Virus record (IMG/VR): IMGVR_UViG_3300017917_002374
Coordinates: 1-64,000 of that record
DNA length: 64,000 nt
Direction: 5' to 3' (one strand)
Each line of letters opens with the position of its first letter. The first letter of the stretch is position 1. The position numbers and the translations under genes were made by a program. Under the pieces are notes generated by a model, which saw only the letters and a list, made by a program, of their open reading frames with translations, searched no databases and had not been told where the DNA came from. Of this stretch, positions 27,324 through 50,741 are shown piece after piece.

Positions 27324-28991
27324 ATGCGTCTAAACGAATTTGAATCACTGGATCTTGCTGTTAATTTTCATGACGAATTGAACCCAAAACTATGGGATGA
27401 CAATCGCATGCGTCCCGAAGTACGTGCAGCACTCATGCGTATCGCAGAAAATTTCAAAGATTTCTTGGGTGTTGATATCTATGATTTACTGGATATCACA
27501 GTAAGTGGTAGTAATGCAGCATATACCTATACTTCACACAGCGACATTGATCTACATCTTGTGGTCATGATTCCTGAAGCACACGAAACCGAACTCAAAG
27601 AACTGTTCACAGCTAAAAAATATCAGTACAATGATCAACACGATATCAAGGTACGTGGATTTGATGTTGAACTGTATGTGCAAGATGCAGAAGATCCGCA
27701 TCACAGCATGGGCATCTACAGTGTGCTCAACGATCGCTGGATCAAGCAGCCTAAAAAAGTACGGGCACAAATTGATGATATAGAAGTACAAGAAAAATAT
27801 CGCAGCATCAAACACAGAATCAATCGTGCTATTGTTAGCGACGACTACGACAGTGTGCAGCAGGTTTGGAACAGTGTGAAAAACATGCGCCAGACTGGTC
27901 TAGAACAAGGTGGTGAATTCAGCCCTGAAAATCTTGCATTCAAGATTCTGCGAGCAGACGGTACCTTGGAAAAACTCAAGCGTCATATGGGCAATCTCAA
28001 AGATGCCGAACTCAGCATACACGAAGCCACTAATGCTCCTAAAAGAAAAAGTGAAGTGTATCTAGACATGGATGGTGTGTTGGCAGATTTTTTTGCAGAG
28101 TATGCAAAACTGGCGGGCGTTCAAGGAACCTATAGAGACATACCTCCTGCCAAGACTGACCCTACCTTGAACAAAATGGTAGGTACTGATTTTTTTGCAC
28201 GATTGCCTAAGTTTGGATCCGCAGATACCTTGGTCAGCATGGTGACAAGTATATTTGGTCACTATAACATCTGCTCCAGTCCACTGCGCGGAGATCACGC
28301 CAACAGTGAAAAACAAAAACGTATTTGGATCGCAAAACATCTATCACCACAGCCTAAAGATATCATTATAACACCACGTAAAGAACGTCATGCAGTACAA
28401 GAGGATGGCACTCCTAATGTGTTGATTGATGACCGCGGTGACAACATTACCAAGTGGGAAGCAGCTGGCGGCGTGGGAATAAAATATCAAGCAGATGAAG
28501 ATGGTCTTGACACTGTGACTCGTGGATTAAAACGTGCTATGAAAATCATTGCAGGCAAAAAGCAGCTGGTGCCGCAAAAATTAAAAAGTCTAGATCGCAG
28601 CATGCCAGTGGCCACACAGGACGACCCCAAGCCTCTACAGGAAACCGTTAACCAATCAGAAGTGGTCAATTTTATTAAATTTGTTTATGACAGACTGCAT
28701 ATAGACGCTCCGCTACCACGCATCAAACTGCAACAGGAAAAAGAATCTCCAGATCAAAATCGCACTGGTTGGTATAACCCTGATACAAATGAAATGTGGG
28801 TGTACACAGGCAACAGAAATTTGATTGATATTCTACGCACGGTGGCTCACGAACTGGCACATCACAAACAAAGACTAGATGGTGACACTGCTGCCAACAC
28901 TGAACTGACAGACCTAGAAGGACAAGCAGATCAAGTGGCAGGCATAATTATGAAAATATATGTAAGAAAGCATCCGGAGATTATTGAATGA
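27324..28991 (+). CDS. Fusion protein: Pol-beta-type nucleotidyltransferase + HAD 5'(3')-deoxyribonucleotidase + HExxH zincin
   Basis: GSNAAY..SDIDLH / VELYVQD; YLDMDGVLAD..LIDDR; TVAHELAHH; domains joined at IHE and LQE. Confidence 0.8.
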   Translation: MRLNEFESLDLAVNFHDELNPKLWDDNRMRPEVRAALMRIAENFKDFLGVDIYDLLDITVSGSNAAYTYTSHSDIDLHLVVMIPEAHETELKELFTAKKYQYNDQHDIKVRGFDVELYVQDAEDPHHSMGIYSVLNDRWIKQPKKVRAQIDDIEVQEKYRSIKHRINRAIVSDDYDSVQQVWNSVKNMRQTGLEQGGEFSPENLAFKILRADGTLEKLKRHMGNLKDAELSIHEATNAPKRKSEVYLDMDGVLADFFAEYAKLAGVQGTYRDIPPAKTDPTLNKMVGTDFFARLPKFGSADTLVSMVTSIFGHYNICSSPLRGDHANSEKQKRIWIAKHLSPQPKDIIITPRKERHAVQEDGTPNVLIDDRGDNITKWEAAGGVGIKYQADEDGLDTVTRGLKRAMKIIAGKKQLVPQKLKSLDRSMPVATQDDPKPLQETVNQSEVVNFIKFVYDRLHIDAPLPRIKLQQEKESPDQNRTGWYNPDTNEMWVYTGNRNLIDILRTVAHELAHHKQRLDGDTAANTELTDLEGQADQVAGIIMKIYVRKHPEIIE

Positions 28992-30292
28992 GGTACCAAG
29001 ATTTTTTAGCGGAAGGCATACTGTTTGAATATGATAGAACAATCACTGCCAAGAACTATGGAGACAAGATTTTACTTGTAGCAGCCAAAGACCGTTGGCT
29101 GGTTGATCAAATTGCAGGACGCAATCGTCTAGGCATGAGCTTTCAAGAAGCAGTGAAAAAAGATCCTGCCATGATCATAGATGCTATTTTAGAAATACTA
29201 GAACGTGGCGATCCCACCCGCAATAAAGAATACACACAGGCCATTGCCAAGATGTATGCCAATGGTGGCATCATGGCAGAGGATGTGGTATCCACTCTAG
29301 CAGACTACCTGGCTAAGTTTGACAAGCTGAAACGCCGGAAGAAAATTCCGCCGCCACGTAACGACTTCAATCGTTACAAGAGCAAGGATGATTTCTATGA
29401 TGTGGTGGATGAATATCCTGACGAAGAAGCAGAAGACAAACCAGAAGAAAAAAAGAACGCTACGGAACTGTATCGTGATAGCAAACTGATTGTGACCATA
29501 CCCAATGATGTGGAAGCTGCCTGTTACTATGGACAGGGCACACGCTGGTGTACAGCGGGCAAGAACAATAACATGTTTGACTACTATACCAAGGGAGGCC
29601 GTCCACTGTATGTGATCATTCCACGACAGCAGGAGTACCCAGGTGAAAAGTATCAGTTTCACTTCGAAACCAAGCAGTTCATGAATGAACAGGATCGTCA
29701 GATTGGCGAAGACGGCATGCGCAAGCTGGTCAAGCGTTTTCCACAGTTGCCCAAGATCCTGCAGAAGCCTGCAGAGCAGTTCATGATTGCACCACTACTG
29801 TCGCAGGAATACAAGAACATCGTGATAGAAAGCACAGAAGAAGTTCAGAAGGCCACTGTGCAGTTGATCAATCAGTATGCTGACCGTATCATTGCATTTG
29901 GATTCAAGAGTTTGGATGGCTATGGTGTGCAATTGCCAGACGCAGCAAAACAGACCATTGCAGACAGCATGCGTGACTACTTGGCTGACTGTGTGAAAAA
30001 CATGGGCAGCTTTTGGCAGGAGATTACTGCCAAACCAGAACTGGCTCGTGATGAAGACAAGATTGAAAGCCTGCTGAGTGCCAACAGAAATCTACAGGCA
30101 GTGGCAGATAAAAGCGCAGCGGTGGACCAGCTGAAAGCAGCACTGGCACAGACCGGACAGAAGATTCACAAGGATGCAATGGCACACATTATTGAACTCA
30201 CAGTGCGTGATCCACTGTTCCGCTTCATGATGAAACAGGTGGCCAAACTGTACACCGCTAAACTACAGGAGCAGGGCCATGCGCTACAGTGA
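28988..30292 (+). CDS. Putative head-packaged protein with YGxGTxWC domain (PcfJ-like, tentative)
   Basis: N-terminus MRYQDFLAE; AACYYGQGTRWCTA, KYQFHF. Confidence 0.55.
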   Translation: MRYQDFLAEGILFEYDRTITAKNYGDKILLVAAKDRWLVDQIAGRNRLGMSFQEAVKKDPAMIIDAILEILERGDPTRNKEYTQAIAKMYANGGIMAEDVVSTLADYLAKFDKLKRRKKIPPPRNDFNRYKSKDDFYDVVDEYPDEEAEDKPEEKKNATELYRDSKLIVTIPNDVEAACYYGQGTRWCTAGKNNNMFDYYTKGGRPLYVIIPRQQEYPGEKYQFHFETKQFMNEQDRQIGEDGMRKLVKRFPQLPKILQKPAEQFMIAPLLSQEYKNIVIESTEEVQKATVQLINQYADRIIAFGFKSLDGYGVQLPDAAKQTIADSMRDYLADCVKNMGSFWQEITAKPELARDEDKIESLLSANRNLQAVADKSAAVDQLKAALAQTGQKIHKDAMAHIIELTVRDPLFRFMMKQVAKLYTAKLQEQGHALQ

Positions 30293-32141
30293 ACTGATTG
30301 AAAACACAGACAGCGACGATGATTTGTTTGCTAAACCATTGGCGGATAGAATTCGTGCTCGTTTGGCAGAGTTAGAAGATCAGGACTTTATGGAACCTGA
30401 GGACATGATTGACCAGGTGGCTGAGGAGTTCAATCTAGAAGTAGAACAAGTTTATGATCTACTGGATGACGAAGTATACGAAAACACAGATGACGATGAT
30501 CTGTTTGGCGGCAGTGATCGCGGGACGCCCTCTCCTGAGAAGGCAGTGGCCAAGTTCAAGATGTTTTTTCCTATAAACAAGCGTGTGAGCTGGAGTAAGA
30601 TGCATTTTGGAACCGTTGACCGCTTGTTTGGCTTCTCCACCGACTCACGTTTTCACGCAGGAGCCAGTTATGACAGACACAGCTACTGGGGCACACAGGC
30701 CTATACCAATCGCCAGACTGGCCTAGGCTTGCTGATCTATGAAGACAGTGGTCAAGGTACCTGGGCATATCTAGGCGCACAGAGTCGTGAGGATATGGCT
30801 CACATGATACAGCAGTTGATTGCAGCAGATCAGTTGGAAGATCCTGAGGCAGCAAAGCAACGTCGCCTGGCCAAACAACAAGGCCGTGCTGCTGCCGCTG
30901 AGAAAAAAGGCATTCGTGTGGGCGCCAAGATACGAGTACCCTACCAAGGACAAACTGCCACAGCAGAAGTGGTCAGCATTTCCAAGGCTGGTAAACTGAA
31001 CCTACGCATGATAGATGGACCAGATGCAGGACAACTGCACTCCTGGCAGCCCTCCGCACACAGCGTTAGAAAAGCAGATGTGCTAGGTGAGAATGATGAT
31101 GACGATGACGAGCTGTTTGGTGAGCCAAGATCCTACATGTTCATTGTGGCAGCTCCAGATGATGAAATAGTAGGAAACTACAAAAATATTGAAGATGCTC
31201 TAGACGCAGCACGATTTTTAGTAGATGATTATCTAGAGGCAGGCTATGAGGACACTGATGCTATTAGAGTTATGAAATACAAAACAGACAGTGATGGCAT
31301 GGTTGATTTTGACGAAGCAGGGGTCACAGTTGGCACTATCTATCTAGGCACAGGAGAACTGGCAGAAAATTTTGACGACGATGATATGTTCGCTACCCCC
31401 ACAATCAAGTTTGCTGACTTGTTCAACGAGTACGACGAGGATCAATTAATGGCACAAGGTTTTCAATATGGAGACCATCCTGAGCAGGACATTGAAATAC
31501 TCAACGACTATTTAGAAGACTATAAAGATTTCCGTGTGGTTGGTATCAGTGGCGGCGAGCATGACCTAGTGCTGCATCTAGACCGCAGCAGCAAACTAAG
31601 AGAAACAGACGATGATGAACTGTTTGGTTCACTAGCACTAACCGCTGCCAAGATTGGTAAACTGTTAGGTGCAGCAGGCATAACCAGTGGTGAAATCGTT
31701 GATCCTGAAAGCGTAAATCTAGCCTTGCACAGAATTGCGGCACTGGACAAGTATCGTATCCGGGCAGAAATCATGCAGCAGCAGTGGTTGAACATGGATG
31801 AAGACACTGCCTGGAACATGGTAGATGACATAGCCAATGTGGTATACGACATCAACGGTGACGGCTGGGAACCAGAAGACACCATCTACAACGAATCAGA
31901 TGATGAGCTGTTTGGTAAAAAGTGGCATGAGCGCATCAACATGAGCAGCATTGAGTTGGACGGCATAGATCGCAGTGACAGTCCTGACTTCTCAGATGCT
32001 CATGTGAGCTATGCAGAGTTTGACGACGGCAAGCCACTGAATAATGAACAGTTGGAATGGCTGACCAATGAGCTGGGCAGCACAGGTGAATTGCATGAGC
32101 TGGTCTGGGACAGTTTGCACGAGGGCCAGCATGCGTTATAA
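30279..32141 (+). CDS. Modular acidic polyprotein-like protein, 6 xE-DDDLF linkers
   Basis: LIE-NTDSDDDLF, VYE-NTDDDDLF, LGE-NDDDDDELF, LAE-NFDDDDMF, LRE-TDDDELF, YNE-SDDELF. Confidence 0.75.
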   Translation: MRYSELIENTDSDDDLFAKPLADRIRARLAELEDQDFMEPEDMIDQVAEEFNLEVEQVYDLLDDEVYENTDDDDLFGGSDRGTPSPEKAVAKFKMFFPINKRVSWSKMHFGTVDRLFGFSTDSRFHAGASYDRHSYWGTQAYTNRQTGLGLLIYEDSGQGTWAYLGAQSREDMAHMIQQLIAADQLEDPEAAKQRRLAKQQGRAAAAEKKGIRVGAKIRVPYQGQTATAEVVSISKAGKLNLRMIDGPDAGQLHSWQPSAHSVRKADVLGENDDDDDELFGEPRSYMFIVAAPDDEIVGNYKNIEDALDAARFLVDDYLEAGYEDTDAIRVMKYKTDSDGMVDFDEAGVTVGTIYLGTGELAENFDDDDMFATPTIKFADLFNEYDEDQLMAQGFQYGDHPEQDIEILNDYLEDYKDFRVVGISGGEHDLVLHLDRSSKLRETDDDELFGSLALTAAKIGKLLGAAGITSGEIVDPESVNLALHRIAALDKYRIRAEIMQQQWLNMDEDTAWNMVDDIANVVYDINGDGWEPEDTIYNESDDELFGKKWHERINMSSIELDGIDRSDSPDFSDAHVSYAEFDDGKPLNNEQLEWLTNELGSTGELHELVWDSLHEGQHAL

Positions 32142-34479
32142 CGAGATCATTGAAAGTGCGGATGATGACGATGACCTGTTTGGTCGCGGTCTGCATCATC
32201 GTATCGCTGCGGCTCTACTGGCACAGGCCGAGGAAGACCAGCGTATCGCAGATGAAGAACGCGGACTAGGTGACCAGATTCATCGTAATGTGCAAAACGC
32301 AGATGAGTTTGAAGCACAAGCTAGAAACTATCGTTACATAGCAGACGCTTTTAATCAAAGCATGGCTCAGGGAGTTAAAGTTTATCGCAGTCTAGACCGC
32401 AGCTGGAAAGGTGCAGTGGATGATGTTGTGGACATTGAGCTTGACATGGACTTCCGCGACTATGTGAAACAGATTCCAGAAAGTGCGGATGACGATGACT
32501 TGTTCTCTACCAGTCCAAAGTTGGATCGCCGTCAAGAGCTGAAAGCCAAGGCCATTCGTCGCATAGAAAAGCGTGACGCACTGAACATACAGCCAGGCAC
32601 ACGACTCATGGTCAAATGGGACAATGGCAAATACTACAAAGGCAAAGTGGTCAGACTCACTCCCAGTGGCCGCGTGATAGCACAGGTAAAGTTTCACAAT
32701 GTGGGCTGGCCCTTGGAAAAGAACATCAGTCCACGTGACATCAAGCCTGAACACATCTTGAAAGAAACAGATGATGACATGTTTGCCAAGAACAGTCAGA
32801 TGAGCCAAGACATCAAAACCAAGCTAAAACAAATTGATGATCCTTATCTGCGCACTGTACGCAAGATTCGTGAGTTGGCAAAAACCAAATATGGTGCAAA
32901 AATTCGTGTGAGTGGTGCACCCAAGACATCGGCCCGCGGCAGAGCAACTGTTTGGGTGGGCGACTATGATGCAAATTATCAAATTCCAAAAACTACCCCT
33001 GAGGCCTATGCTGTAAAAAACGATTTAGAACAGATGGGATTTGAGTGTCGTTTTACAGACGCAGGTTGGCTCAGTGTCAAGGTTCCGCCAGTGTTCTCTG
33101 ATCTAATCAGCGAAGAAAGCGACGACGAGCTGTTTGGGCAAGAAGATGGCGCTCGTCTGGCACTGAAACTATTGAAACTGTTACGAGCAGCAGTGGCTCG
33201 CGATCCTCGTGGTGTGGGTGAAATGCTGAAACAGTACAGCAATGAAAACAGCACTCTGGCACAGAGAGTAGATTATACCTTGGATTACATGGCACAGGCC
33301 GTGGGCATGCCACGTGAGATATTTGACAAATACGCAGATGACTTTTTCATACTGCCATGGCCCACAGGTGTGGACATAAACCGTCCATGGCAGATCTGGG
33401 ATGCACAGGTGTTGGACCGAATCATTGAGACCATGCGACGAGTGGTTTATGGCCGGGACATGAATGAAAGTGATAATGACGATGACCTGTTCAGCCATAG
33501 TGTGCATGAAGAAGTGATATATCGTGTGGAAGAATATAAAAAAGGTCTTGAAAAACATCTAGAAGTAGTACAGCAGGCAGATCCTGAAGACGCAGAATAT
33601 CTTGAGGATGTGATCAATGATGTGAATCAAGTGTTGGCCAAATTGCAGAAAAATTGGATAGAAGGCATGGATGCACTGCTACAAGCATCAGATAGCGAGG
33701 ACTGGGCAGAAAATATCATGCACGAACTCAAGGCAGATAATATACCGTTGAACAGATACTACCGCGCACCTTGGCTGCGCGAAGACGCAGACGATGATGA
33801 ACTGTTTGGTGAAACTACCTTGGCAGATCGTGTGGCTGATTTAATCAAGCACAAGCAACGTGTACGCATTCTAGTACCTGGTGCCATGGGCTTTGTGCGA
33901 GCTGTATTTCATGGCAGCACTGCTATCAGTCGCAGCATGAAGAGCACTACACGCTACGCCTGGCCAGGACTGCACGGCGAACGAGCTAACGGCCTTGAGT
34001 TGGTACAAAATCCTGCCACACGCACCTGGGACATTGTAGAGCGAGACCAGGCTGTAAACATGCGTAAATACACAGAAGACATTGGTGACGATGAACTGTT
34101 TGGCAGCGGCTACAGTGCTGTGCAAAGACAGATCTATGAAACAGGCCGGCAAATGTTGCAAGCACTGAAAGACAGTTGGAAACAGGATTCTGTGCGCAGC
34201 GAATTTCAAACTTACATGGATGCCGACGATGGCGACGCTATGTTTGATCTTGTGCAGGATGTGACCAGAGTGCATGGTTGGCCAGCACTGGTAGTAGACA
34301 CTGTGATTCGTGAATACACTACCATGGAAGGACTCAACGACTTTGGCTGGATGCTGGAAGAAGGCAGCTTCAACGACCTAGAGGAAGCCTGGGAAAGATT
34401 TAGAACAGATAGAGAAATCAAAAACGAACCCTGGTTCCAAGCGGAAGCAGACAGATTTATGAAAAGAAAACTAAGATGA
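32131..34479 (+). CDS. Modular polyprotein-like protein, 7 xE-DDDLF linkers
   Basis: Start MRYNEIIE at 32131; IIE-SADDDDDLF, IPE-SADDDDLF, LKE-TDDDMF, ISE-ESDDELF, MNE-SDNDDDLF, LRE-DADDDELF, YTE-DIGDDELF. Confidence 0.75.
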   Translation: MRYNEIIESADDDDDLFGRGLHHRIAAALLAQAEEDQRIADEERGLGDQIHRNVQNADEFEAQARNYRYIADAFNQSMAQGVKVYRSLDRSWKGAVDDVVDIELDMDFRDYVKQIPESADDDDLFSTSPKLDRRQELKAKAIRRIEKRDALNIQPGTRLMVKWDNGKYYKGKVVRLTPSGRVIAQVKFHNVGWPLEKNISPRDIKPEHILKETDDDMFAKNSQMSQDIKTKLKQIDDPYLRTVRKIRELAKTKYGAKIRVSGAPKTSARGRATVWVGDYDANYQIPKTTPEAYAVKNDLEQMGFECRFTDAGWLSVKVPPVFSDLISEESDDELFGQEDGARLALKLLKLLRAAVARDPRGVGEMLKQYSNENSTLAQRVDYTLDYMAQAVGMPREIFDKYADDFFILPWPTGVDINRPWQIWDAQVLDRIIETMRRVVYGRDMNESDNDDDLFSHSVHEEVIYRVEEYKKGLEKHLEVVQQADPEDAEYLEDVINDVNQVLAKLQKNWIEGMDALLQASDSEDWAENIMHELKADNIPLNRYYRAPWLREDADDDELFGETTLADRVADLIKHKQRVRILVPGAMGFVRAVFHGSTAISRSMKSTTRYAWPGLHGERANGLELVQNPATRTWDIVERDQAVNMRKYTEDIGDDELFGSGYSAVQRQIYETGRQMLQALKDSWKQDSVRSEFQTYMDADDGDAMFDLVQDVTRVHGWPALVVDTVIREYTTMEGLNDFGWMLEEGSFNDLEEAWERFRTDREIKNEPWFQAEADRFMKRKLR

Positions 34480-36722
34480 AAAGCAAAGATTTCCTAAATG
34501 AAAAGTGGAGCCAGAAGTACAAGAAGAGCATCAACTGCTCTAACCCCAAAGGCTTCAGCCAACGTGCGCACTGTGCAGGCCGCAAGAAAAACGAAAGTGT
34601 GGAACTGGATGAAATTGATCGCAGAGGATTCCTCAAGGGCCTTGGTGCTGCTGCACTGGCAGGTGCAGGTGGCGCTGCCATGGCAGGAGATCTAGAAGGT
34701 CAGATAGGCCCACTGCCCATCATGGCTACTATCAAAGTGCAGATGCCAGACGGCACTGTGAAAACAAAAAAGATTGATCTTGGTCATGAGTACGACTACA
34801 GACTGGATGATGCCAAGAAAGAAATTGAACAGATCCTGGATCGCAAGGGCGTGAAGAACTATACCATTCACTTGGACAGATACAAGGACAATGAGGCATA
34901 TCTGGATCGTGAACAGATGAAGCCGCAGTCAAAGACTGACAAAAACGACTACATGGATCGTAAACCCTATCAGCCCAAAGGCGGCAGTGGCAGCTATGTG
35001 GACAACACACCTGCCCGGGCCAGCGGCAAACACAACTACATGGATCCTGCCAACTACGAAGAAAGTTTACAGGAATACGGCGATACTGCCCGAGGTCAAA
35101 AGCAGTTGACCCGGGTTCACAAACGTGCAGTTGATCGTCTAATCAAGGCAGATGACCAAAACATGTTAGAGCCAGATTATACCAAAAGAGATTTAAAAAC
35201 AGTAAGAAAGAATGCAGACACTGCTAACCGTGCTTGGGATAGATTCACAGATCTGGATTTAGATGAAGCATCAGTTTATAAAAAAGATCAAGACCTAAGC
35301 AGTATTCCTACTCAAGAACTTGAAGCATTTGTTAAAAAACATTGGGGTGGTGGTATTCCAACTTATGGCCAAGGCAAAAGTGTTCAACGAGCCATGCGAG
35401 AATTGCGCCGCAGACAAAAGCAAGGTGTGGCGGAAGGCTCTGCTGGAGCAAAATACAAAATAAAAAGCATTGGCAAAGACAAGAACGGTGATTACTACAT
35501 CAGCCCTAACACAGGCAAAAAAGTTTACAAGAATGCTAAAGTGGGTGATCACGAAACTCCACGCGGGGAAGTAAAACCTAAGGTGACGGAAAACAATGAC
35601 AGTGATGAAGAATTGTTTAGCGTGTCTCAAACGCCACCACGAACAGCACAGGCACTATACCATTGGAGCCGCATGGATCCCAACAGATACAGTTTTCGTG
35701 CCATAGCTGAATTTGCCTTGAGTAACAAGCTGACCTTAAAGCAGGCACTGGAAGTTACTTCAAGGTTTGACGAGTACAACGAACAGATGCAAGATGAATA
35801 TGGTGTTGATGATGATCAAATGAGTGATCTGTTTGGCGCATATGAAGAAGTGTGTGATGCATGGAACACTGATCCAACAGGCGATACCAGTACAAATGAC
35901 TCCTGGGAAAAACTACGAGAAGCAGATGCAGAACTAGCAGAACCACCTGAGCGTCCACGCAAAACCACAACAAAGACCAAGACCAAACCTGATATCAAAT
36001 TTGATATTCCGTTCCAGCAAGATCAAGATCGTCCTCTGGCCAAAACAGATCCACTGGATGACTTGAAAAAGAAAGCTGGACTAGGTGATGAGCCTAAGGT
36101 CAACATTAAGAAGGCCAAACAAAAGGATACCTTGAGCAAAACCGCAGGCATTGGCAGTGATGACATGGCAGACATGCTGAGTCGCATGCGTAACATTGAA
36201 ATAGATCGTGATCTAGAAGCCTATCCAGAGCCAGAACCACCAGAGCAGTTGCCATCAGTGGAAGTGAACACAGCCAATTTGCCAGCAGTGGCAGGGCAGG
36301 CATTACAAGCCGCAGGCGTGCAGAATCCAGATTTCCATCAAGTGGCTAACCTGCCAGGCAACATGGCAGACCAAATTCGCCAGCTGGGCAAGAGTCTGTT
36401 TGGCAGTCTAACCATGACACCTACCAAGCGTATTCACGTGGTGGCCAATCTAGGCGGACAAGGCCCTAACAGCTCAGCAGAAGTAAACGCAGTGGCCGGC
36501 TTCCTAAAAGACCACGGTAAAGATCTAGGCCCAGGCGACATTGACTTTGACAATGTCATGCCAGGCTACAAGGCACAAACACACATGTTCTCAGCAGCAG
36601 GCATTCGCTGGATGCTGGTAAAAGACTTTGCCGGACAGTACATCTACTGCTGGCCAGAAGAAGACAGCCATGATGCAGTGGATGCGATTGGCCAGGACAC
36701 GGACGTTAAAAGACTAAAATGA
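34476..36722 (+). CDS. Modular polyprotein-like protein with internal Tat-like signal
   Basis: MKSKDFLNE; LDE-IDRRGFLKGLGAAALAG; QGVAE; VTE-NNDSDEELF; further LQE/LDE/LRE joints. Confidence 0.7.
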   Translation: MKSKDFLNEKWSQKYKKSINCSNPKGFSQRAHCAGRKKNESVELDEIDRRGFLKGLGAAALAGAGGAAMAGDLEGQIGPLPIMATIKVQMPDGTVKTKKIDLGHEYDYRLDDAKKEIEQILDRKGVKNYTIHLDRYKDNEAYLDREQMKPQSKTDKNDYMDRKPYQPKGGSGSYVDNTPARASGKHNYMDPANYEESLQEYGDTARGQKQLTRVHKRAVDRLIKADDQNMLEPDYTKRDLKTVRKNADTANRAWDRFTDLDLDEASVYKKDQDLSSIPTQELEAFVKKHWGGGIPTYGQGKSVQRAMRELRRRQKQGVAEGSAGAKYKIKSIGKDKNGDYYISPNTGKKVYKNAKVGDHETPRGEVKPKVTENNDSDEELFSVSQTPPRTAQALYHWSRMDPNRYSFRAIAEFALSNKLTLKQALEVTSRFDEYNEQMQDEYGVDDDQMSDLFGAYEEVCDAWNTDPTGDTSTNDSWEKLREADAELAEPPERPRKTTTKTKTKPDIKFDIPFQQDQDRPLAKTDPLDDLKKKAGLGDEPKVNIKKAKQKDTLSKTAGIGSDDMADMLSRMRNIEIDRDLEAYPEPEPPEQLPSVEVNTANLPAVAGQALQAAGVQNPDFHQVANLPGNMADQIRQLGKSLFGSLTMTPTKRIHVVANLGGQGPNSSAEVNAVAGFLKDHGKDLGPGDIDFDNVMPGYKAQTHMFSAAGIRWMLVKDFAGQYIYCWPEEDSHDAVDAIGQDTDVKRLK

Positions 36723-38998
36723 GATACAACGAACTGATTGAAAACGATGATGAGGACATGTTTGGCGCCAGCGAACGTGTGGATCGTGACCTGCGTCGCG
36801 CTACCTTCAATGCCAATATACCAGAAATGATTCGTCGTGTGCAGCAGGGCCTACTGGCCAGTGCAGATCGTCAGGCGCGAGCCATGGCCATGGAGTTTGT
36901 TAGAGAAGCCAACTATCTTGAAAAAGAAGAAGTGTATGGACTGGCTCGCGAGATATTCACACACGATGCACCGCAGCATCTGCATCAGGCCTTTGCTATT
37001 GTGAGTGAGGATCCTGCCATCATTGCAGATGAAGATATGCTGAGTGACGTCTTGATGACCAACAACATATTCACCAACATACGCAAGGACAGCGATCTGT
37101 GGATCTATGCAACAGAAATGATAGAAGATTTTGCTGAAGGTGACGAGGAACTGGAATATCACCTGGGCATGGAAATAGAAGGCACAGTGGGCAATCTAAT
37201 AGTACGGCTCATGCAAGACGCATTTGCCAATGTGCGAGCACTGGGTGAGAATAGCAAGCCAGGTGTGCCGCAACCAGGGCCAAGTTCTGGGGCTCCTAAG
37301 AAATTTGGCTCTGATGCTAAAATACAAACTCGCCAGATGACGGTAAATGATATTATATCATCTGTGCCTGGTGTTCCCTATTACAACAATGTGGTGGATG
37401 ATTGGGACGCCAAAGATTACAGTTGGGGCGTGACCAAAAAGGTCATAGAGTACGCAACCTACTTGAAGGATCATCCAGAAAGTCTGGCACAGTTACCGCC
37501 AGCAATAGTGTTGAATGGCAAGTTTGAAGATGGTGCCCACAGGGTATCTGCCATATGGTTGCTGCAACAAAGAATGGATCCTAAAAATCCCTTATGGAAA
37601 CGTGCCAAATTAAATGTTCAGTTTGTTGAGCAAGGTGTCACAGAAGCCACAGACGACGAACTGTTCAGCAAATCACGTGAGCGTCCTGTGAATCGTTTTA
37701 CCATTTATGTTAATAATAAACCACTGCGCACCATGATAGATCTGGAGCAGGCGGCAGGTGTGGCAGAGGACTTGATAAACCAAGAAACCCGGCGAGTGAA
37801 TGTGCAGGTGGTCAACGCCGTTGATGGTGAAATACTCTGGAGTGGCGGCACTGACCGCATGGGCAAATGGTATGGTGCTTATGCAGCTTATCTTGAAGAA
37901 ACAGAAGATGATGACGACTTGTTCAGCAATCGCCCCAACGGCAAAGTAATAGCACATGATCTAGAACTGTGGCTGCGTCGCAGACAGTCAGGCAGTCGTC
38001 GTCCGCTCAGCAGCTATTCTGCAGATGCCATAACGGAAATTATAGCAGCGTTTAATAAAAGTTTTGCAGCAGGTGTGCAGGCCTGGGACGTGGCGCCAAT
38101 CATTGCAGATCTAAAATACGACATTCGCGAGTACATTGGCAGCAGTCAGCACATTGATCTTGCTGACCATGTGCAAGAACTCAATGAAGCTCCTCTAGCA
38201 GACTACGAGCCCATGGGTGACTTTGAAAAGCCAGGCCCCTTTCGTGGCGCAGATAAGAAATTAATTCCTCATCCTACCAACAAGCTCAAGACCGCACGTT
38301 TCTTTGAACAAACACCCTATGACTTTAGACTGTTCTTCAGCAACATTCCTGGCACCGGTCGTTACAGCGAATACGGTCCAATGGAACCACGGGTCATACA
38401 AGAGATATTCAAGGATGCTGCTGAACAGATTCTAGCAGGATCAGAAAATGCCATTACAGTGGTGTTTGTGGGCAACAAAGGTGACAGCAAGGTCATGCTC
38501 ACACCCTGGATGATGGCGCATAGAATTGGACATGCTGTGCAAGCCGGCACAAGATTAGCAGGTGGACGCGGCGCCTGGCGCGAAGCAGAAAATCATTTCT
38601 TCCGTGGCATCAATCAATTGCTCAAAGACTTCTATGGCAAGAGCAGCAACAATCGTTACGACGGTGAAGCCAACTGGGCCATGAGTCAAGAATATGCAGC
38701 ACTGTTCAATGCCATTGGCACACAGCGCAGTAGCCGCAAAGGTGAGATCAAAAGACCATACGAATTTCTGTATGAATTGTTTGCACAGTATCTGGGCACA
38801 GGACGGATTGAGCTCAATCCACTGCCACAAAAACAATCCTATGGTCGCAAGGTGTTTGGTCGCAGCAGTCAAAGTCTACGCATGACACCTGGCGCAGAAG
38901 AGGAATCAAAATACACAACTGAAGTCTTAGCACGTGACATGGAAATCATGTTCAGCGATGTGCTGAGTGAACTGGTTGGGAAAGTGTTGGTGATGTGA
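36719..38998 (+). CDS. Modular polyprotein-like protein with a ParB/Srx-like module and an HxxxH module; 3 xE-DDDLF linkers
   Basis: MRYNELIE-NDDEDMF; LPPAIV..EDGAHR; VTE-ATDDELF; LEE-TEDDDDLF; MAHRIGH. Confidence 0.7.
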   Translation: MRYNELIENDDEDMFGASERVDRDLRRATFNANIPEMIRRVQQGLLASADRQARAMAMEFVREANYLEKEEVYGLAREIFTHDAPQHLHQAFAIVSEDPAIIADEDMLSDVLMTNNIFTNIRKDSDLWIYATEMIEDFAEGDEELEYHLGMEIEGTVGNLIVRLMQDAFANVRALGENSKPGVPQPGPSSGAPKKFGSDAKIQTRQMTVNDIISSVPGVPYYNNVVDDWDAKDYSWGVTKKVIEYATYLKDHPESLAQLPPAIVLNGKFEDGAHRVSAIWLLQQRMDPKNPLWKRAKLNVQFVEQGVTEATDDELFSKSRERPVNRFTIYVNNKPLRTMIDLEQAAGVAEDLINQETRRVNVQVVNAVDGEILWSGGTDRMGKWYGAYAAYLEETEDDDDLFSNRPNGKVIAHDLELWLRRRQSGSRRPLSSYSADAITEIIAAFNKSFAAGVQAWDVAPIIADLKYDIREYIGSSQHIDLADHVQELNEAPLADYEPMGDFEKPGPFRGADKKLIPHPTNKLKTARFFEQTPYDFRLFFSNIPGTGRYSEYGPMEPRVIQEIFKDAAEQILAGSENAITVVFVGNKGDSKVMLTPWMMAHRIGHAVQAGTRLAGGRGAWREAENHFFRGINQLLKDFYGKSSNNRYDGEANWAMSQEYAALFNAIGTQRSSRKGEIKRPYEFLYELFAQYLGTGRIELNPLPQKQSYGRKVFGRSSQSLRMTPGAEEESKYTTEVLARDMEIMFSDVLSELVGKVLVM

Positions 38999-39258
38999 TG
39001 CTCAAACTATTGGTTCTCAGCGTGGCACTGAATGCGGCAGAATTGCCATATAGAGAGTTGGAAAAGTACTACTGGGACTGCGATACCCTGTTCATGAAAG
39101 GTGAACTGGGCGGGCAGGACACCTGGAGTTGTCTGGCTGTCACTGACGAGTTCCAAACCTATTTTGACAGCAAAGAAGATTTCATGATCTATTGGCACGA
39201 ACACAGAATGCAACAGTGGCAGAGTCGTGGTTATTACCCTAAGGCAGAGATATACTAA
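38998..39258 (+). CDS. Small secreted hypothetical protein
   Basis: Short signal-like N-terminus. Confidence 0.55.
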   Translation: MLKLLVLSVALNAAELPYRELEKYYWDCDTLFMKGELGGQDTWSCLAVTDEFQTYFDSKEDFMIYWHEHRMQQWQSRGYYPKAEIY

Positions 39259-39259
39259 A

Positions 39260-39985
39260 ATGAGATACCACGAAATAGTAGCAAAAGATTCACCTGCTGA
39301 GGATAGGCATCCTAATGATCGTCCATATGGACCAGAAGCCAAACCTACCATGCCCAAGGGCACAGTTAGAGTGGATGTCAGCGACGTGTATGATTGGTAC
39401 AAGCTGGGCATGAACATCAGTGATCTTAAAAAAGCCAACAAGAGTCAGTTTGGTAAAGGTCCTCCTAGCACCATAGTTTCTTTTGGTGACGAAAACACTG
39501 AACACAAGTATATCAAGGATCTTGAAAATCTTGGACTTACGACCACTGACATAGATCCTGTTGATCCCAATCAGCCCCGAGGCATGCCGCGTCAGAAAGT
39601 TGATCCCACATTCAATGTAGATGAAAACTTTGCTGATGGCAAAGTAAAAGGCAAGAGTCGTCCGGGCCGTGTGAAACGTGCAGGCGCAAGTTGCAACGGG
39701 TCAGTAACTGATCTACGAGCTCGTGCCAAGAATGCTAGCGGTGAAAAGGCAAAAATGTATCACTGGTGTGCAAACATGAAAAGTGGTCGTAAGAAAGCCA
39801 ATGAAGCCAGCCCCACAGGACTAGAGTTTAAAGGTTACCCATGCACCAAGGACTGTTCAGGACATCAAGCCGGGCATGATTGGGCAGAGCGTTGGGGTAT
39901 TGAAAATCCAGATTCTTGTCCTTACAGCAACAACAGTTTCTGGGAGGGCTGTCTAGCTCGCACAGACGACTTTCAAGATGAGTAA
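39260..39985 (+). CDS. Modular protein with three E-joined modules, two of them Cys-rich
   Basis: MRYHEIV start; VDE-NFADGK..SC..HWC; ANE-AS..GYPCTKDCSGH. Confidence 0.65.
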   Translation: MRYHEIVAKDSPAEDRHPNDRPYGPEAKPTMPKGTVRVDVSDVYDWYKLGMNISDLKKANKSQFGKGPPSTIVSFGDENTEHKYIKDLENLGLTTTDIDPVDPNQPRGMPRQKVDPTFNVDENFADGKVKGKSRPGRVKRAGASCNGSVTDLRARAKNASGEKAKMYHWCANMKSGRKKANEASPTGLEFKGYPCTKDCSGHQAGHDWAERWGIENPDSCPYSNNSFWEGCLARTDDFQDE

Positions 39986-39993
39986 ATAAGCAT

Positions 39994-41349
39994 ATGAAAA
40001 TTACAGAAATTACCAAAGGTCGCACATTAGGCGGATTCCCAGTCCAAGTGTTAGACATACAAAACAGCGAAGTAGACGAAAATCAATATCGCCGCGAGTT
40101 TAAACGCAACGAGCTAGAACATGAGCTAGGACACGAAACAAACAACTATTCCGTTAGTATTAATGGTAAAAGTTGGAAAGTGTTTGCGAGCAAAGCACAT
40201 GCCGAAGCAGTGGCTCGCAGTGTACAAATGAAAAATCCTACCAAAAAAGTAGGTGTGCATGAGACTGGTGAATCAGTCTCAGAAGCACTCAAGCTGAACG
40301 CTCCGCAGCGTCGCATGAGTAGAGATGAGTTACAAGGCTATGCTGATCGTATTAAAACAGGTACTAAAACCAAACAAGATAAATTTGCACCAATTATTCA
40401 CGGGAGTAATATCAAGGCAATCACGCAGAGCGACAATCCTGATGACAAATGGGATCTGGATGATCTAGCGGCGCAGATTACAAAACGTCCTTCTAAAATA
40501 CTTGGCACCAATGCCAAAATGGAAAAAAGCCGTACAGAAGGCGAGATTGTGTATGACCTTACGCTACCAGCACTTTCCGGCATAGTGGTGGATGAAAGTA
40601 ACGGCGACTTTGTGGAAATCACAACCTGCCCAGGTGCAGGTGAATGCCAATTGTATTGTTATGCTCGCAAGGGCGGATATGTGATGTTTCCTGCCAGCTC
40701 CATGAGTGCGGCACAGGCCTTGAACTTCTTGGTTAATGATCCTGAGGGATACATGGCCATGGTGAATCGCGAAGTTAAAGCACTCAAAGGCAAAACAGAC
40801 AAGCATGGGATTAGACTGGTAGTACGTTGGCACGATGCAGGCGACTTCTTCAGCAAAGAATATTTAGATCTAGCCTATAAGGTAGCAGAAGCCAATCCTG
40901 ATGTGAAGTTTTATGCTTATACCAAGATGGGCGAAGTGGCAGTAGGAAACAAGCCGGCCAACTTTATTGTGAACTTCAGCACAGGTGCCAAGAGTCGTGA
41001 AGTGAAAAAAGTTACCTTACACAAACAAGCAGGCAACATTGTTAAGGACGCCATCACTGTGCCTAAGGACATGTTCCGCAACCTGTTTGTAACAGATGCC
41101 AAAGGCAAGTATGTGAAGGATGAAAAAGGTCGTACACAGGTGCGTGGCGAAGCGGAATGGAATCAATTCAAACAGCAGTTGGGCGCCAAGTATGACATTG
41201 ATCCAGACACCATTATTACATATGACCAAATGCTAAAGATTCCAGAAGGGCCTACGCCCAAGTGGCATGTGGTTATTTTCCCTGCAGGGCATGGCGATCG
41301 TGCTGCAAACAGACTGGACGTGATCAACAGTTTCTTAATGTTTCATTAA
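39994..41349 (+). CDS. Phage GP88-like Cys-cluster protein with N-terminal extra modules
   Basis: TCPGAGECQLYCYA, VRWHDAGDFFS, FYAYTK. Confidence 0.75.
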   Translation: MKITEITKGRTLGGFPVQVLDIQNSEVDENQYRREFKRNELEHELGHETNNYSVSINGKSWKVFASKAHAEAVARSVQMKNPTKKVGVHETGESVSEALKLNAPQRRMSRDELQGYADRIKTGTKTKQDKFAPIIHGSNIKAITQSDNPDDKWDLDDLAAQITKRPSKILGTNAKMEKSRTEGEIVYDLTLPALSGIVVDESNGDFVEITTCPGAGECQLYCYARKGGYVMFPASSMSAAQALNFLVNDPEGYMAMVNREVKALKGKTDKHGIRLVVRWHDAGDFFSKEYLDLAYKVAEANPDVKFYAYTKMGEVAVGNKPANFIVNFSTGAKSREVKKVTLHKQAGNIVKDAITVPKDMFRNLFVTDAKGKYVKDEKGRTQVRGEAEWNQFKQQLGAKYDIDPDTIITYDQMLKIPEGPTPKWHVVIFPAGHGDRAANRLDVINSFLMFH

Positions 41350-50145: not shown

Positions 50146-50330
50146 AAACAGTTTGGATCATGGTCGTGCTAGTAATAGCAGATGGTGAATGGAGAGAGTG
50201 GGATCACCATTACGCTAGACTAGAAGAATGCCTTGAAGCCAAAGAAATACTCACACATCGCAGAGAACATCTTTTAACCATACGCTGCGAACCAAGACAA
50301 GTAAAATCACTTGACATTCCTGAAAAATAA
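50142..50330 (+). CDS. Small protein with N-terminal hydrophobic segment and Cys pair
   Basis: MKTVWIMVVLVI...EEC...RC. Confidence 0.55.
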   Translation: MKTVWIMVVLVIADGEWREWDHHYARLEECLEAKEILTHRREHLLTIRCEPRQVKSLDIPEK

Positions 50331-50345
50331 ATATACACTGTAATC

Positions 50346-50717
50346 TATTGCTGTATGAAGCAGATTGAAAGGCGTTCTGGACGCGGGTTCGACTCCCGCC
50401 TGGTCCACCAAAAGTATATTACTAAGAGTCCAGGTTCAGAGCGTGGCATAATATACTTCTGATGGGCCAGACATGGTTTCGACAGGGTGATGAGTAAGGA
50501 AGTGGACAGCACGGCAATGCGAAAGCCGTAGGACAGGGGTAACCCGGTCGTAGAAGCAAACCAAGTAAATGCAAAAGCATCTACAACAGAGAGCGCAGTA
50601 AAAGTAACCAAAGCACGTGGTTTCCGTTTCGGCGGTGCTCGTGTTGCGGCAGCTGACGCTGCTTTCGCCTAATCAGCGAAAACTCCGGGGCAGTTATGCC
50701 TTGTAACCCAAAATAGC
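50346..50717 (+). ncRNA. ssrA: Circularly permuted (two-piece) tmRNA
   Basis: Acceptor piece with T-arm gcggg-ttcgact-cccgc and ctggtcc-ACCA ends at 50410; coding piece starts gggccag at 50464; 7-bp acceptor stem with G3.U70; tag ORF 50571-50672; promoter TTGACA(50311)-17-TACACT; outer ends approximate. Confidence 0.92.
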
Positions 50718-50741
50718 AAAACGGCCTTCGGGCCGTTTTTT
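50718..50741 (+). terminator. Terminator after tmRNA
   Basis: aaaacggcc-ttcg-ggccgtttt plus T. Confidence 0.85.

What the first reader, a model, noticed from the sequence alone, without database searches (positions are those of the whole stretch)
34605..34688. Cryptic twin-arginine (Tat) signal directly after a predicted maturation cut
Seen: about 45 aa into the 748-aa protein is LDE|IDRRGFLKGLGAAALAGAGGAAMA-G. This is an RRxFLK Tat motif, a Gly/Ala h-region and an AxA cleavage site. Known: Tat signals act near the N-terminus and export folded proteins. Inference: cleavage after LDE would expose the signal, so an injected module could be exported to the host periplasm or could jam TatBC. This independently supports the polyprotein model.
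Basis: partly seen in the sequence, partly recalled or inferred. Interest (0 to 1): 0.7.

Follow-up and report, generated by a model that had tools for sequence, protein, structure and literature searches.

The report
Tat export signal inside phage polyprotein
A giant uncultivated phage carries a textbook bacterial twin-arginine export signal in the middle of a mosaic multi-module protein, always just after a glutamate site of the kind its capsid protease should cut, which suggests (but does not prove) that a virion-delivered fragment is sent on to the host periplasm.

Summary
Residues 44-71 of the 748-aa ORF (34476-36722, +) read LDE|IDRRGFLKGLGAAALAGAGGAAMA|G. The segment passes NCBIfam's Tat-signal cut-off and is the only such match in all six frames of the 355-kb phage genome.

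It heads a roughly 150-aa mobile module. I found 54 non-redundant copies of such signal-like segments in metagenomic phage proteins. They start at residue 18 to 863 of their proteins and always follow an upstream tag or module.
- 41 copies keep RRGFL[KR].
- 13 copies replace RR by [DE]E but keep the Gly/Ala h-region.
- A hydrophobic-x-Glu triplet precedes nearly all of them.

The signal codons are under purifying selection (pN/pS 0.2-0.4). Close relatives (about 85% DNA identity) have swapped out exactly this cassette (34599-35603) between linker motifs.

The phage has a T4-type head module (gp21-like protease, scaffold-like protein, gp23). It also has a block of coupled genes whose N-termini resemble the T4 capsid-targeting sequence.

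Best reading: a functional export signal that works only after proteolytic release from a packaged polyprotein. Cleavage, packaging, injection and Tat dependence are all inferred. Internal uncleaved Tat signals (FecR type) are a real rival. "Jamming TatBC" has no support. The passenger's function is unknown.

The parts
34476..36722 (+). 748-aa mosaic multi-module ORF (g748). Its start overlaps the stop of the upstream gene (ATGA), and its stop overlaps the start of the next gene in the same way.
34476..34595 (+). N-terminal basic mini-module, residues 1-40 (MKSKDFLNE tag + WSQKYKKSINCSNPKGFSQRAHCAGRKK). It is homologous to a stand-alone 51-aa ORF of cyanomyoviruses and occurs as an internal module in other phage polyproteins.
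34596..34613 (+). Junction S41-V-E-L-D-E46. It holds the hydrophobic-x-Glu triplet L44-D45-E46, the putative protease site directly before the signal. Homology to the close relative L005 ends at 34597.
   Evidence: cleavage inferred only
34614..34685 (+). Tat-type signal peptide, residues 47-70: IDRRGFLKGLGAAALAGAGGAAMA. It has the RR motif (R49 R50), a weakly hydrophobic Gly/Ala h-region and A68-M69-A70 before G71.
34686..35057 (+). Passenger, residues 71-194: a small beta-beta-alpha-beta domain (GPLPIMATI...IHLDRY) followed by DY[MIV]D..P[YL] repeats. Function unknown.
   Evidence: alignment A1; AF2 pLDDT 56; no fold match
35058..35075 (+). Next junction, E195-E-S-L-Q-E200, before module YGDTARGQK. 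It is the same (E/G)-S-hydrophobic-x-E pattern seen before the signal in homologs.
34599..35603 (+). Swapped-in cassette, residues 42-376: the Tat module plus two or three further small modules. In relatives L005/L006 (about 75-85% DNA identity in the flanking homologous blocks) other modules take its place, and after the same mini-module they have an NESTDTDADLFG linker.
35583..35624 (+). Acidic linker V370-T-E-NNDS-DEELF-S383, one of 17 such linkers in the gene block. DNA homology to the relatives resumes at 35604.
35913..36719 (+). Conserved C-terminal domain, residues about 480-748. It has 2710 relatives. The stand-alone forms have no signal peptide and start with capsid-targeting-like tags.
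27324..41349 (+). Block of eight adjacent, partly overlapping genes. Seven have N-termini that follow M-[RK]-x-x-[DE]-[FLI]-[LIV]; the eighth starts MKITEITKG. Compare the T4 capsid targeting sequence MKTYQEFIAE. Four of them (30279-38998) carry the acidic-LF linkers.

Best explanation
The segment is a genuine Tat-type export signal. It heads a small mobile passenger module (signal plus a roughly 125-aa domain) that phages of this group insert in frame into modular polyproteins.

In the primary product the signal is buried. It lies 46 residues in here and up to about 860 residues in elsewhere. It becomes a working N-terminal signal only when the polyprotein is cut at the conserved hydrophobic-x-Glu junction directly upstream.

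The most likely cutter is the phage's T4 gp21-type prohead protease. On that reading:
1. The polyprotein is carried into the prohead by its N-terminal capsid-targeting-like tag.
2. It is diced into roughly 50-270-aa pieces during head maturation.
3. The pieces are ejected with the DNA.
4. The released Tat module is picked up by the new host's TatBC and moved to the periplasm. Signal peptidase can then trim it at AMA|G.

Shown:
- Tat-model match above threshold, unique in the genome.
- Conservation of RRGFL[KR], the h-region and the Glu junction across many different contexts.
- Purifying selection on the signal codons.
- Cassette mosaicism.
- A T4-type protease, scaffold-like protein and gp23 in the genome.

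Inferred: cleavage at E46, packaging, ejection, Tat dependence, periplasmic destination. The passenger's function is unknown.
For: (1) Signal quality. TIGR01409 scores 20.3 bits against a 16.7 cut-off. It is the single six-frame hit in 355 kb, at E 1.1e-5. Homologs P0045 and P0046 pass the Pfam gathering score.

(2) All 41 RR-type copies were collected by the pattern RRGFL[KR][GA][LM]. Within them the rest of the signal is also kept, across at least four unrelated passenger domains. A plain membrane helix would not need the F-L-K of the Tat consensus.

(3) The signal codons are under purifying selection in the fused context. Window vs P0172 shows 14.5 synonymous and 7.5 non-synonymous differences in 24 codons. 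pN/pS is 0.2-0.4 in all pairs, and the replacements are conservative (K>R, L>M, G>T, M>A).

(4) The signal always follows an upstream tag or module: the motif starts at residue 18 to 863. Up to three signal-plus-domain units occur in one ORF (P0033).

(5) A Glu junction directly precedes the signal in both variants despite differing upstream modules. In stand-alone genes the same payloads follow an N-terminal tag ending in hydrophobic-x-E. Examples are P0154 (MRAVEFIVIENSVEE|VDRRGFL) and the L009 gene MRAKEFITEE|WSQKYKK. So tag end and internal junction are positionally equivalent.

(6) The downstream C-terminal domain is not an exported domain. Fifty-two relatives of 300 aa or less were examined; the complete stand-alone ones show no N-terminal signal. 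Orthologs in L005 and L007 carry the same C-terminal half with no signal at all. The signal therefore cannot be meant to export the whole protein.

(7) The genome has Peptidase_S77 (96 bits), a coiled-coil scaffold-like gene next to it and gp23 (E 1.9e-101).

(8) From the literature: T4 gp21 cuts after Glu (ITE-6 and LTE-619 of Alt). The T4 capsid-targeting sequence is a roughly 10-aa N-terminal tag. Tagged foreign proteins are packaged, delivered into the next cell and refold there (PMC5694885, PMC9026906, PMC8442874).
Against: - There is no protein-level evidence of any kind. The phage and all relatives are metagenomic, and no GenBank phage carries the module.
- 13 of 54 copies lack RR ([DE]E in those columns). 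So Tat cannot be the universal route, and the hydrophobic segment may be what matters.
- The LDE site lacks the acidic-LF linker that marks the other junctions in this block.
- Hydrophobic-x-Glu triplets are common in these acidic proteins: there are 12 in g748.
- Copies are related by descent, so 54 is not 54 independent events.
- The capsid-targeting resemblance is a short pattern match, not a tested homology.
- Internal Tat signals can work uncleaved.
- The docking attempt with E. coli TatBC gave no answer.
- The passenger model has low confidence (pLDDT 56).
Confidence: 0.42

Rival explanations
1. Internal, protease-independent Tat signal (class V / FecR-like, or simply a Tat signal with a long n-region). 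The intact protein is made in the infected cell. The 46-aa basic mini-module stays cytoplasmic, TatBC recognises the internal RR signal, and everything downstream (about 680 aa) goes to the periplasm, with or without signal-peptidase cleavage at AMA|G. No maturation cut and no injection are needed.
For: Internal uncleaved Tat signals preceded by a folded cytoplasmic domain are documented (FecR; Streptomyces Rieske proteins; PMC13673990). In g748 and its closest relatives the signal is only 46-70 residues from the N-terminus. P0154 has RR at residue 18-19, a normal position for a Tat signal.
Against: - The downstream modules are the same ones that close relatives carry without any signal (L005, L007). 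The C-terminal domain family generally lacks signals, so its compartment would flip between phages whose orthologs are 81-89% identical over the shared part.
- Homologs place the signal at residues 135-863, between cytoplasm-type domains: cytidylyltransferase-like, sigma-70 region 4, GP88.
- Two or three signals can sit in one ORF, which gives an impossible topology without cutting.
Confidence: 0.2
2. The segment is not an export signal but a membrane-interacting helix of an ejected or head-core protein. The Gly/Ala-rich segment with a positive flank would insert into the inner membrane. It could help form or anchor the DNA-entry conduit, or tether prohead core components to the membrane during assembly. 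The Tat-like look would be incidental or only ancestral.
For: The h-region, not RR, is the invariant part: 13 of 54 copies have no RR. Ejection proteins with predicted transmembrane helices that are cut by the prohead protease are described in phage SPN3US (gp47; PMC5694885). P22 and T7 eject membrane-inserting proteins (PMC8402733 abstract).
Against: - The uncharged stretch is only 13-19 residues and weakly hydrophobic (Kyte-Doolittle about 1.4-1.5 over 15 residues). That is short for a stable transmembrane helix.
- The G-F-L-[KR] after RR is kept in every one of the 41 RR copies and matches the Tat models above threshold.
- A polar residue flanked by Ala (AMA, AKA, AQA, ADA, AHA) always ends the segment.
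Confidence: 0.2
3. Evolutionary baggage. The module was once a free-standing gene for a Tat-exported protein. It was fused in frame into the polyprotein together with its signal, which is now inert.
For: - Position -2 before RR is M/I/V/L (9 M of 41), as if a former start codon: EEMDRRGFLK looks like an intact N-terminus.
- The cassette boundary falls just before V42 (GTG).
- Module shuffling is rampant in these proteins.
Against: - The signal codons show purifying selection in the fused state (pN/pS 0.2-0.4 with pS 0.34-0.8).
- The signal is retained on four different passenger domains and in about 20 different upstream contexts.
- No free-standing copy with the signal at the extreme N-terminus was found. 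Eight hits of 99-211 aa all carry a tag or mini-module first.
Confidence: 0.1
4. Internal translation start. A second product begins at V42 (GTG) or nearby and is an ordinary Tat pre-protein made in the infected cell. The long ORF is a by-product of gene fusion.
For: GTG at 34599 is in frame, five codons before I47. Some homologs have ATG two codons before RR.
Against: - There is no Shine-Dalgarno-like sequence upstream of V42 or of the homolog's ATG, whereas about half of the gene starts in this window have one.
- V42 is not conserved (S-T-ELDE, N-S-ELDE in P0173 and P0174).
- The non-RR variant has no possible start codon at the junction (EGWKS).
Confidence: 0.06

Closest known systems
Bacterial Tat signal peptides (TIGR01409 / PF10518; class I substrates)
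   Same: It has the RR-x-F-L-K motif, a weakly hydrophobic Gly/Ala h-region of about 16 residues and an AxA end. It scores above the NCBIfam cut-off.
   Different: It is not at the N-terminus of the translation product: residue 47 here, up to about 860 in homologs. It is encoded by a phage and embedded in a mosaic polyprotein. Asp replaces Ser/Thr before RR.
T4 internal proteins and Alt: capsid-targeting-sequence-directed, gp21-processed, injected head proteins
   Same: The phage has a gp21-family protease, a scaffold-like gene and gp23. The gene block has N-termini like MKTYQEFIAE. Junctions are hydrophobic-x-Glu, like gp21 sites. Modules are small, often basic and hypervariable between relatives, as at the T-even ip loci (PMC9026906).
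   Different: Many modules are fused in one ORF instead of one tag per small gene. No T4 internal protein is known to carry an export signal. Packaging and processing are untested here.
Polyvalent proteins of phages and conjugative elements (Iyer et al. 2017, PMC5512222)
   Same: Large proteins built from many unrelated, shuffled domains. They are predicted to be delivered with the DNA and to be proteolytically released. A neighbouring gene ends in an HExxH metalloprotease-like domain.
   Different: That survey does not mention signal peptides, twin-arginine, transmembrane or periplasm at all (0 occurrences). None of its hallmark domains was found in g748. Here the junctions are short, recurrent linear motifs.
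Bipartite transit peptides of thylakoid-lumen proteins (stromal cleavage exposes a Tat signal). Recalled from general knowledge, not tested here.
   Same: The logic is the same: a first targeting tag takes the protein into compartment 1, a protease removes it, and the newly exposed twin-arginine signal drives a second, Tat-dependent step.
   Different: That is a eukaryotic organelle system with one passenger per precursor. Here compartment 1 would be a phage capsid followed by another cell's cytoplasm.
Class IV/V Tat substrates with internal uncleaved signals (Streptomyces Rieske, FecR; PMC13673990)
   Same: A Tat signal that is not N-terminal and is preceded by another domain.
   Different: Those signals are single, uncleaved membrane anchors in cellular proteins. 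Here the segment ends in an AxA-type site, can occur several times per ORF, and is followed by modules that elsewhere lack any signal.

Membership tests
Tat signal peptide (TIGR01409 / PF10518) | Twin-arginine consensus (S/T)-R-R-x-F-L-K | tested here: met
   D48-R49-R50-G51-F52-L53-K54. Six of seven positions match; Asp replaces Ser/Thr. RRGFL[KR] is present in all 41 RR-type homolog copies.
Tat signal peptide (TIGR01409 / PF10518) | Score above the curated HMM threshold | tested here: inconclusive
   TIGR01409 scores 20.3 bits against 16.7, which passes; it scores 25.3 bits in the six-frame scan. Pfam PF10518 scores 16.3 against 22.7, which fails. Homologs P0045 and P0046 pass Pfam.
Tat signal peptide (TIGR01409 / PF10518) | Uncharged, weakly hydrophobic h-region followed by a small-x-small signal-peptidase site | tested here: met
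   There are 17 uncharged residues, G55-G71, with a Kyte-Doolittle mean of about 1.4-1.5, and then A68-M69-A70|G71. AxA is weak evidence in an Ala-rich stretch.
Tat signal peptide (TIGR01409 / PF10518) | Location at the N-terminus of the precursor (RR within roughly the first 35 residues; this rule is recalled from TATFIND, not tested with that program) | tested here: not met
   RR is at residues 49-50 of the ORF. In homologs the motif starts at residue 18 to 863. The feature would be met only after a cut at E46.
Tat signal peptide (TIGR01409 / PF10518) | Tat-dependent export, abolished by RR to KK or in a tatC mutant | not testable with these tools
   No experiment was possible. Docking to E. 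coli TatBC gave no answer.
T4-type capsid-targeted, gp21-processed internal head proteins | The phage encodes a gp21-family (Peptidase_S77) prohead protease with T4-type scaffold and capsid genes | tested here: met
   PF03420 scores 96 bits at genome 236252-236698. The adjacent gene is a 366-aa coiled-coil protein. PF07068 Gp23 matches at E 1.9e-101.
T4-type capsid-targeted, gp21-processed internal head proteins | N-terminal capsid-targeting tag of about 10 aa ending in a hydrophobic-x-Glu processing site | tested here: inconclusive
   MKSKDFLNE resembles T4 MKTYQEFIAE. The pattern is clustered in seven adjacent genes, 27324-39985, and on the stand-alone homologs. It is only a short pattern resemblance.
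T4-type capsid-targeted, gp21-processed internal head proteins | Presence in the virion and cleavage after Glu during head maturation | not testable with these tools
   No cultured relative exists and there are no proteomic data.
Polyvalent proteins (Iyer et al. 2017) | Several unrelated, independently shuffled domains in one phage polypeptide | tested here: met
   The modules of g748 recur in other orders and combinations in P0029, P0033, P0045, P0173, P0176 and P0193, and in L005 and L007.
Polyvalent proteins (Iyer et al. 2017) | Hallmark effector or processing domains (MPTase, ArdC-N, etc.) in the same protein | tested here: not met
   g748 has no Pfam or PHROG domain other than the weak TAT_signal hit. 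Only the neighbouring g555 has an HELAH metalloprotease-like tail.
Class V internal Tat substrates (FecR type) | A single internal, uncleaved Tat signal acting as a membrane anchor between a cytoplasmic N-domain and an exported C-domain | tested here: inconclusive
   g748 alone could fit this. Homologs with two or three signals per ORF, and downstream modules that lack signals elsewhere, argue against it. Whether the signal is cleaved is untestable here.

The most novel reading that the evidence does not exclude
Phages of this group pack polyproteins into the capsid. The prohead protease unmasks cryptic Tat-type (and, in the non-RR variant, Sec-like) signal peptides. The ejected fragments are then re-exported by the new host's own translocases into the periplasm within moments of infection, before any phage gene is expressed. 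This would be a two-step 'inject, then export' route for virion-borne effectors, for example for superinfection exclusion or for neutralising envelope-level defence.
Probability: 0.25. Interest if true: 0.85.

Novelty: new variant of a known kind. Interest (0 to 1): 0.62.

Why it matters
If the reading is right, export signals can be stored in a masked form inside virion polyproteins and switched on by capsid maturation. A phage could then place proteins in the host periplasm at time zero of infection.

That would extend two things. The repertoire of phage-injected proteins is so far thought to act in the cytoplasm or as entry conduits. The known Tat substrate classes are N-terminal signals or internal uncleaved ones.

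It also gives sequence-level support for a polyprotein strategy in uncultivated giant phages: junction motifs, mobile modules, and tags equivalent to internal linkers. And it defines a simple, portable test object, residues 1-200 versus 47-200, that can be assayed in E. coli.

Even if Tat export fails, the family is worth knowing about. It is a set of roughly 100-aa modules shuffled at short linear motifs, a compact record of an arms race in a phage group with no cultured member.

Tried and rejected
- DNA and protein searches of GenBank phages (INPHARED). Nothing was found for the 6.9-kb region, the downstream gene, the Tat module or the C-terminal domain. Only the first 38-44 residues hit small cyanomyovirus ORFs.
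- Pfam, PHROG and NCBIfam scans of g748 and its neighbours. There was no informative domain for the passenger. The weak rhamnose-mutarotase hits (13.9-17.7 bits, far below cut-offs) were rejected as an annotation.
- AF2 of the Tat module. Mean pLDDT was 56, and only a beta-beta-alpha-beta core reached 62-72. Foldseek against PDB gave no hit at E <= 0.001. The ESM Atlas gave nothing above chance level.
- AF2 of the C-terminal domain. The core is good (pLDDT above 90). The only fold matches are weak, LppA/DcrB-like (E 5e-3 to 1e-2, TM below 0.35), plus uncharacterised AFDB clusters. No function was assigned.
- PHROG scan of nine stand-alone C-domain homologs and P0154: no family.
- Docking of residues 46-140 to E. 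coli TatC plus TatB(1-70): the verdict was 'no answer', so it is not used either way.
- Internal translation start: no Shine-Dalgarno sequence upstream. It is kept only as a minor rival.
- Cluster look-up for names or organisms of homologs: only 'hypothetical protein' and one automatic 'L-rhamnose mutarotase'.
- Literature search for phage-injected proteins with Tat or signal peptides found no precedent. The polyvalent-protein survey does not discuss signals.
- AxA as independent evidence was downgraded, because it is nearly automatic in an Ala/Gly-rich segment.
Full report
**Context**

The window is the first 64 kb of a complete 354,959-bp uncultivated virus record with direct terminal repeats. 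All long ORFs lie on the + strand. The phage has an rIIA gene at 43472-45646. It has no close relative among GenBank phages.

Outside the window it encodes a T4-type head module:
- a Peptidase_S77 (gp21-like) prohead protease (96 bits; 212-aa ORF);
- an adjacent 366-aa coiled-coil scaffold-like protein;
- a gp23 major capsid protein (E 1.9e-101).

**Observation**

The 748-aa ORF at 34476-36722 reads ...K38 N E S V E L44 D E46 | I47 D R49 R50 G F L K G L G A A A L A G A G G A A68 M A70 | G71 D L E....

- NCBIfam's Tat-signal model scores it at 20.3 bits against a cut-off of 16.7.
- It is the only hit in a six-frame scan of the whole genome, at 25.3 bits and E 1.1e-5.
- Pfam's model is sub-threshold here (16.3 vs 22.7) but passes on two homologs.
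- It is the only long uncharged stretch in the four polyprotein-like genes.

**What surrounds it**

Four consecutive, translationally coupled genes (30279-38998) contain 17 copies of a linker, hydrophobic-x-E-x(1-3)-DDD[DE]-[LM]-F-[GSA]. The copies are mostly spaced 80-120 residues apart. Only one further copy occurs in the other 346 kb.

Seven adjacent genes (27324-39985) begin M-[RK]-x-x-[DE]-[FLI]-[LIV], for example MRYNELIEN, MRYQDFLAE and MKSKDFLNE. This resembles the T4 capsid targeting sequence MKTYQEFIAE (PMC8442874).

In T4 such tags carry internal proteins into the prohead. gp21 removes them by cutting after Glu in short motifs (ITE-6 and LTE-619 in Alt). Tagged foreign proteins are delivered into the next host cell and refold there (PMC9026906, PMC5694885).

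**g748 is a mosaic**

- Residues 1-40 are a basic mini-module. In cyanomyoviruses it is a stand-alone 51-aa ORF.
- DNA homology to the closest relatives (L005/L006) stops at 34597 and resumes at 35604. Residues 42-376 are therefore a swapped cassette.
- In the relatives the same mini-module is followed by an NESTDTDADLFG linker and by unrelated modules with no Tat segment. The C-terminal half is shared at 81-89% identity.
- The C-terminal domain (about 480-748) has 2710 relatives.
- Fifty-two relatives of 300 aa or less were inspected. The complete ones show no N-terminal signal and begin with capsid-targeting-like tags such as MKLFELITEA and MRIIELNEAP.

**The Tat module elsewhere**

An exhaustive HMMER search and two word-indexed searches recovered about 50 proteins. 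These gave 54 non-redundant signal-like segments.

- None is at the extreme N-terminus. The motif starts at residue 18 to 863.
- Forty-one copies are RR-type: [DNS]-RRGFL[KR][GA][LM]-G[AG]AALAG..., ending in AMA, SAA, AKA, AQA or ADA.
- Thirteen copies are a variant in which the RR columns hold [DE]E and the segment starts GWKS[AK][VL]AGAALAG (alignment A1).
- In RR-type copies, positions -5 to -3 are [LIV]-[ED]-E, with Glu at -3 in 37 of 41. In the variant, positions -3 to -1 are [VLF]-[DE]-E, with Glu in 13 of 13. The upstream modules differ.
- At least four unrelated passenger domains follow such signals.
- P0033 carries three signal-plus-domain units in one ORF. P0029, P0180 and P0193 carry two.
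- In P0173, P0174 and P0179 the module sits between homologs of two proteins that are separate genes in this window: the g555 N-domain and the GP88 protein g451.
- In stand-alone form the payload follows a tag, as in P0154 (MRAVEFIVIENSVEE|VDRRGFL...). So the tag end and the internal junction are positionally equivalent.

**Selection**

I compared codons between the window and three relatives whose DNA I could fetch (L012, L013, L009). Synonymous change in the signal segment is near saturation (pS 0.34-0.8), while pN/pS is 0.2-0.4. The replacements are conservative. The signal is being maintained in its embedded position.

**Interpretation**

The simplest account of all this is a functional export signal that needs proteolytic release. 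Five points support it:
- the conserved full Tat consensus;
- purifying selection on the signal codons;
- several signals per ORF;
- downstream domains that are not exported elsewhere;
- a conserved Glu junction, in a phage that has a Glu-specific capsid protease and capsid-targeting-like tags.

Tat fits a protein that arrives ready-made rather than being translated at the membrane. The non-RR variant, after a cut, would start G-W-K-S, a minimal Sec-like n-region. Without a cut, the DE in front of it would be unfavourable.

Every step after [quoted passage not shown] is inference.

**Rivals**

- *Internal uncleaved Tat signals.* These are documented (FecR, Streptomyces Rieske; PMC13673990). 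They could explain g748 on its own. They do not explain the homologs with signals far downstream or in tandem, or the signal-less orthologs.
- *A membrane-inserting helix of an ejected protein.* This is compatible with the loss of RR in 13 copies and with precedents in SPN3US, P22 and T7. It does not explain the invariant G-F-L-[KR].
- *An inert relic of a captured gene.* The selection data argue against this.
- *An internal start at V42.* There is no ribosome-binding site and V42 is not conserved.
- *The 'jam TatBC' idea.* It has no support. The docking job returned no answer.

**What remains unknown**

The passenger is a roughly 55-aa beta-beta-alpha-beta core followed by DY[MIV]D..P[YL] repeats. 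It has no confident model and no fold or family match. The C-terminal domain folds confidently but matches nothing convincingly. No literature precedent for export signals in injected or polyvalent phage proteins was found.

**Verdict**

- It is a new variant combining known parts: a Tat signal, T4-type capsid targeting and processing, and polyvalent or mosaic phage proteins.
- It is of real interest because it is directly testable with a short construct, but it rests on sequence evidence only.

Noticed in passing
30279-38998 (+): There are 17 copies of an acidic linker, hydrophobic-x-E-x(1-3)-DDD[DE]-[LM]-F-[GSA], mostly spaced 80-120 aa apart, in four coupled genes. Only one other copy occurs in the 355-kb genome. 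Mosaic breakpoints between related phages fall at these linkers. The DDD..LF part looks like an SSB C-terminal tail (DDDIPF; from memory, untested).
   Followed up: partly
50297-50741 (+): A phage-encoded permuted tmRNA of the beta-proteobacterial type (Rfam RF01850 at 87 bits, RF04321 at 90.6 bits; ARAGORN agrees). It hints at a betaproteobacterial, diderm host.
   Followed up: partly
34476-34595 (+): The first 40 residues (WSQKYKKSINCSNPKGFSQRAHCAGRKK) are a stand-alone 51-aa ORF in cyanomyoviruses; in phage Bellamy it lies between genes annotated putative tail fiber (gp121) and hypothetical protein (gp123), within the terminase small/large-subunit region. The same unit occurs as an internal or C-terminal module in other metagenomic polyproteins. 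A second basic mini-module, DUF7230, plays the same prefix role in P0151-P0153.
   Followed up: partly
27324-28991 (+): This 555-aa protein combines a phrog_36119 domain, a 5'-3' deoxyribonucleotidase (NT5C) domain and a C-terminal HELAH metalloprotease-like tail. It is a possible alternative processing enzyme for the neighbouring polyproteins.
   Followed up: no
35913-36719 (+): The C-terminal domain of g748 belongs to a very large, unannotated phage family (2710 HMMER hits). Stand-alone members begin with capsid-targeting-like tags followed by a KTKTKT stretch. The AF2 core has pLDDT above 90, and the only fold hits are weak LppA/DcrB-like ones.
   Followed up: partly
32068-34479 (+): The mechanical 803-aa ORF more likely starts at 32131 (MRYNEIIESADDDDDLFG), like its neighbours. 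That start overlaps the end of the upstream gene by 11 nt. Several genes in the block overlap by ATGA.
   Followed up: partly
39994-41349 (+): A GP88-family (PF17338) protein. In P0173, P0174 and P0179 this domain is fused downstream of the Tat module, and a homolog of the 27324-28991 N-domain is fused upstream, all in one ORF.
   Followed up: partly
34836-35057 (+); alignment A1: After the passenger core comes a run of short repeats, DY[MIVL]D[KRN]xP[YLA], with invariant Tyr, Asp and Pro. In many homologs the run ends in ...EFRDM[DG]NY, exactly at the next junction or at the C-terminus. Their role is unknown.
   Followed up: no
L009 and L010 (related metagenomic phage contigs): Relatives encode DnaJ, a ClpB-like ATPase and peptide deformylase just upstream of their blocks of tag-bearing small genes. 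In L009 the modules that are fused in this window occur as separate small genes, each with its own M[KR]xxE[FL] tag.
   Followed up: no
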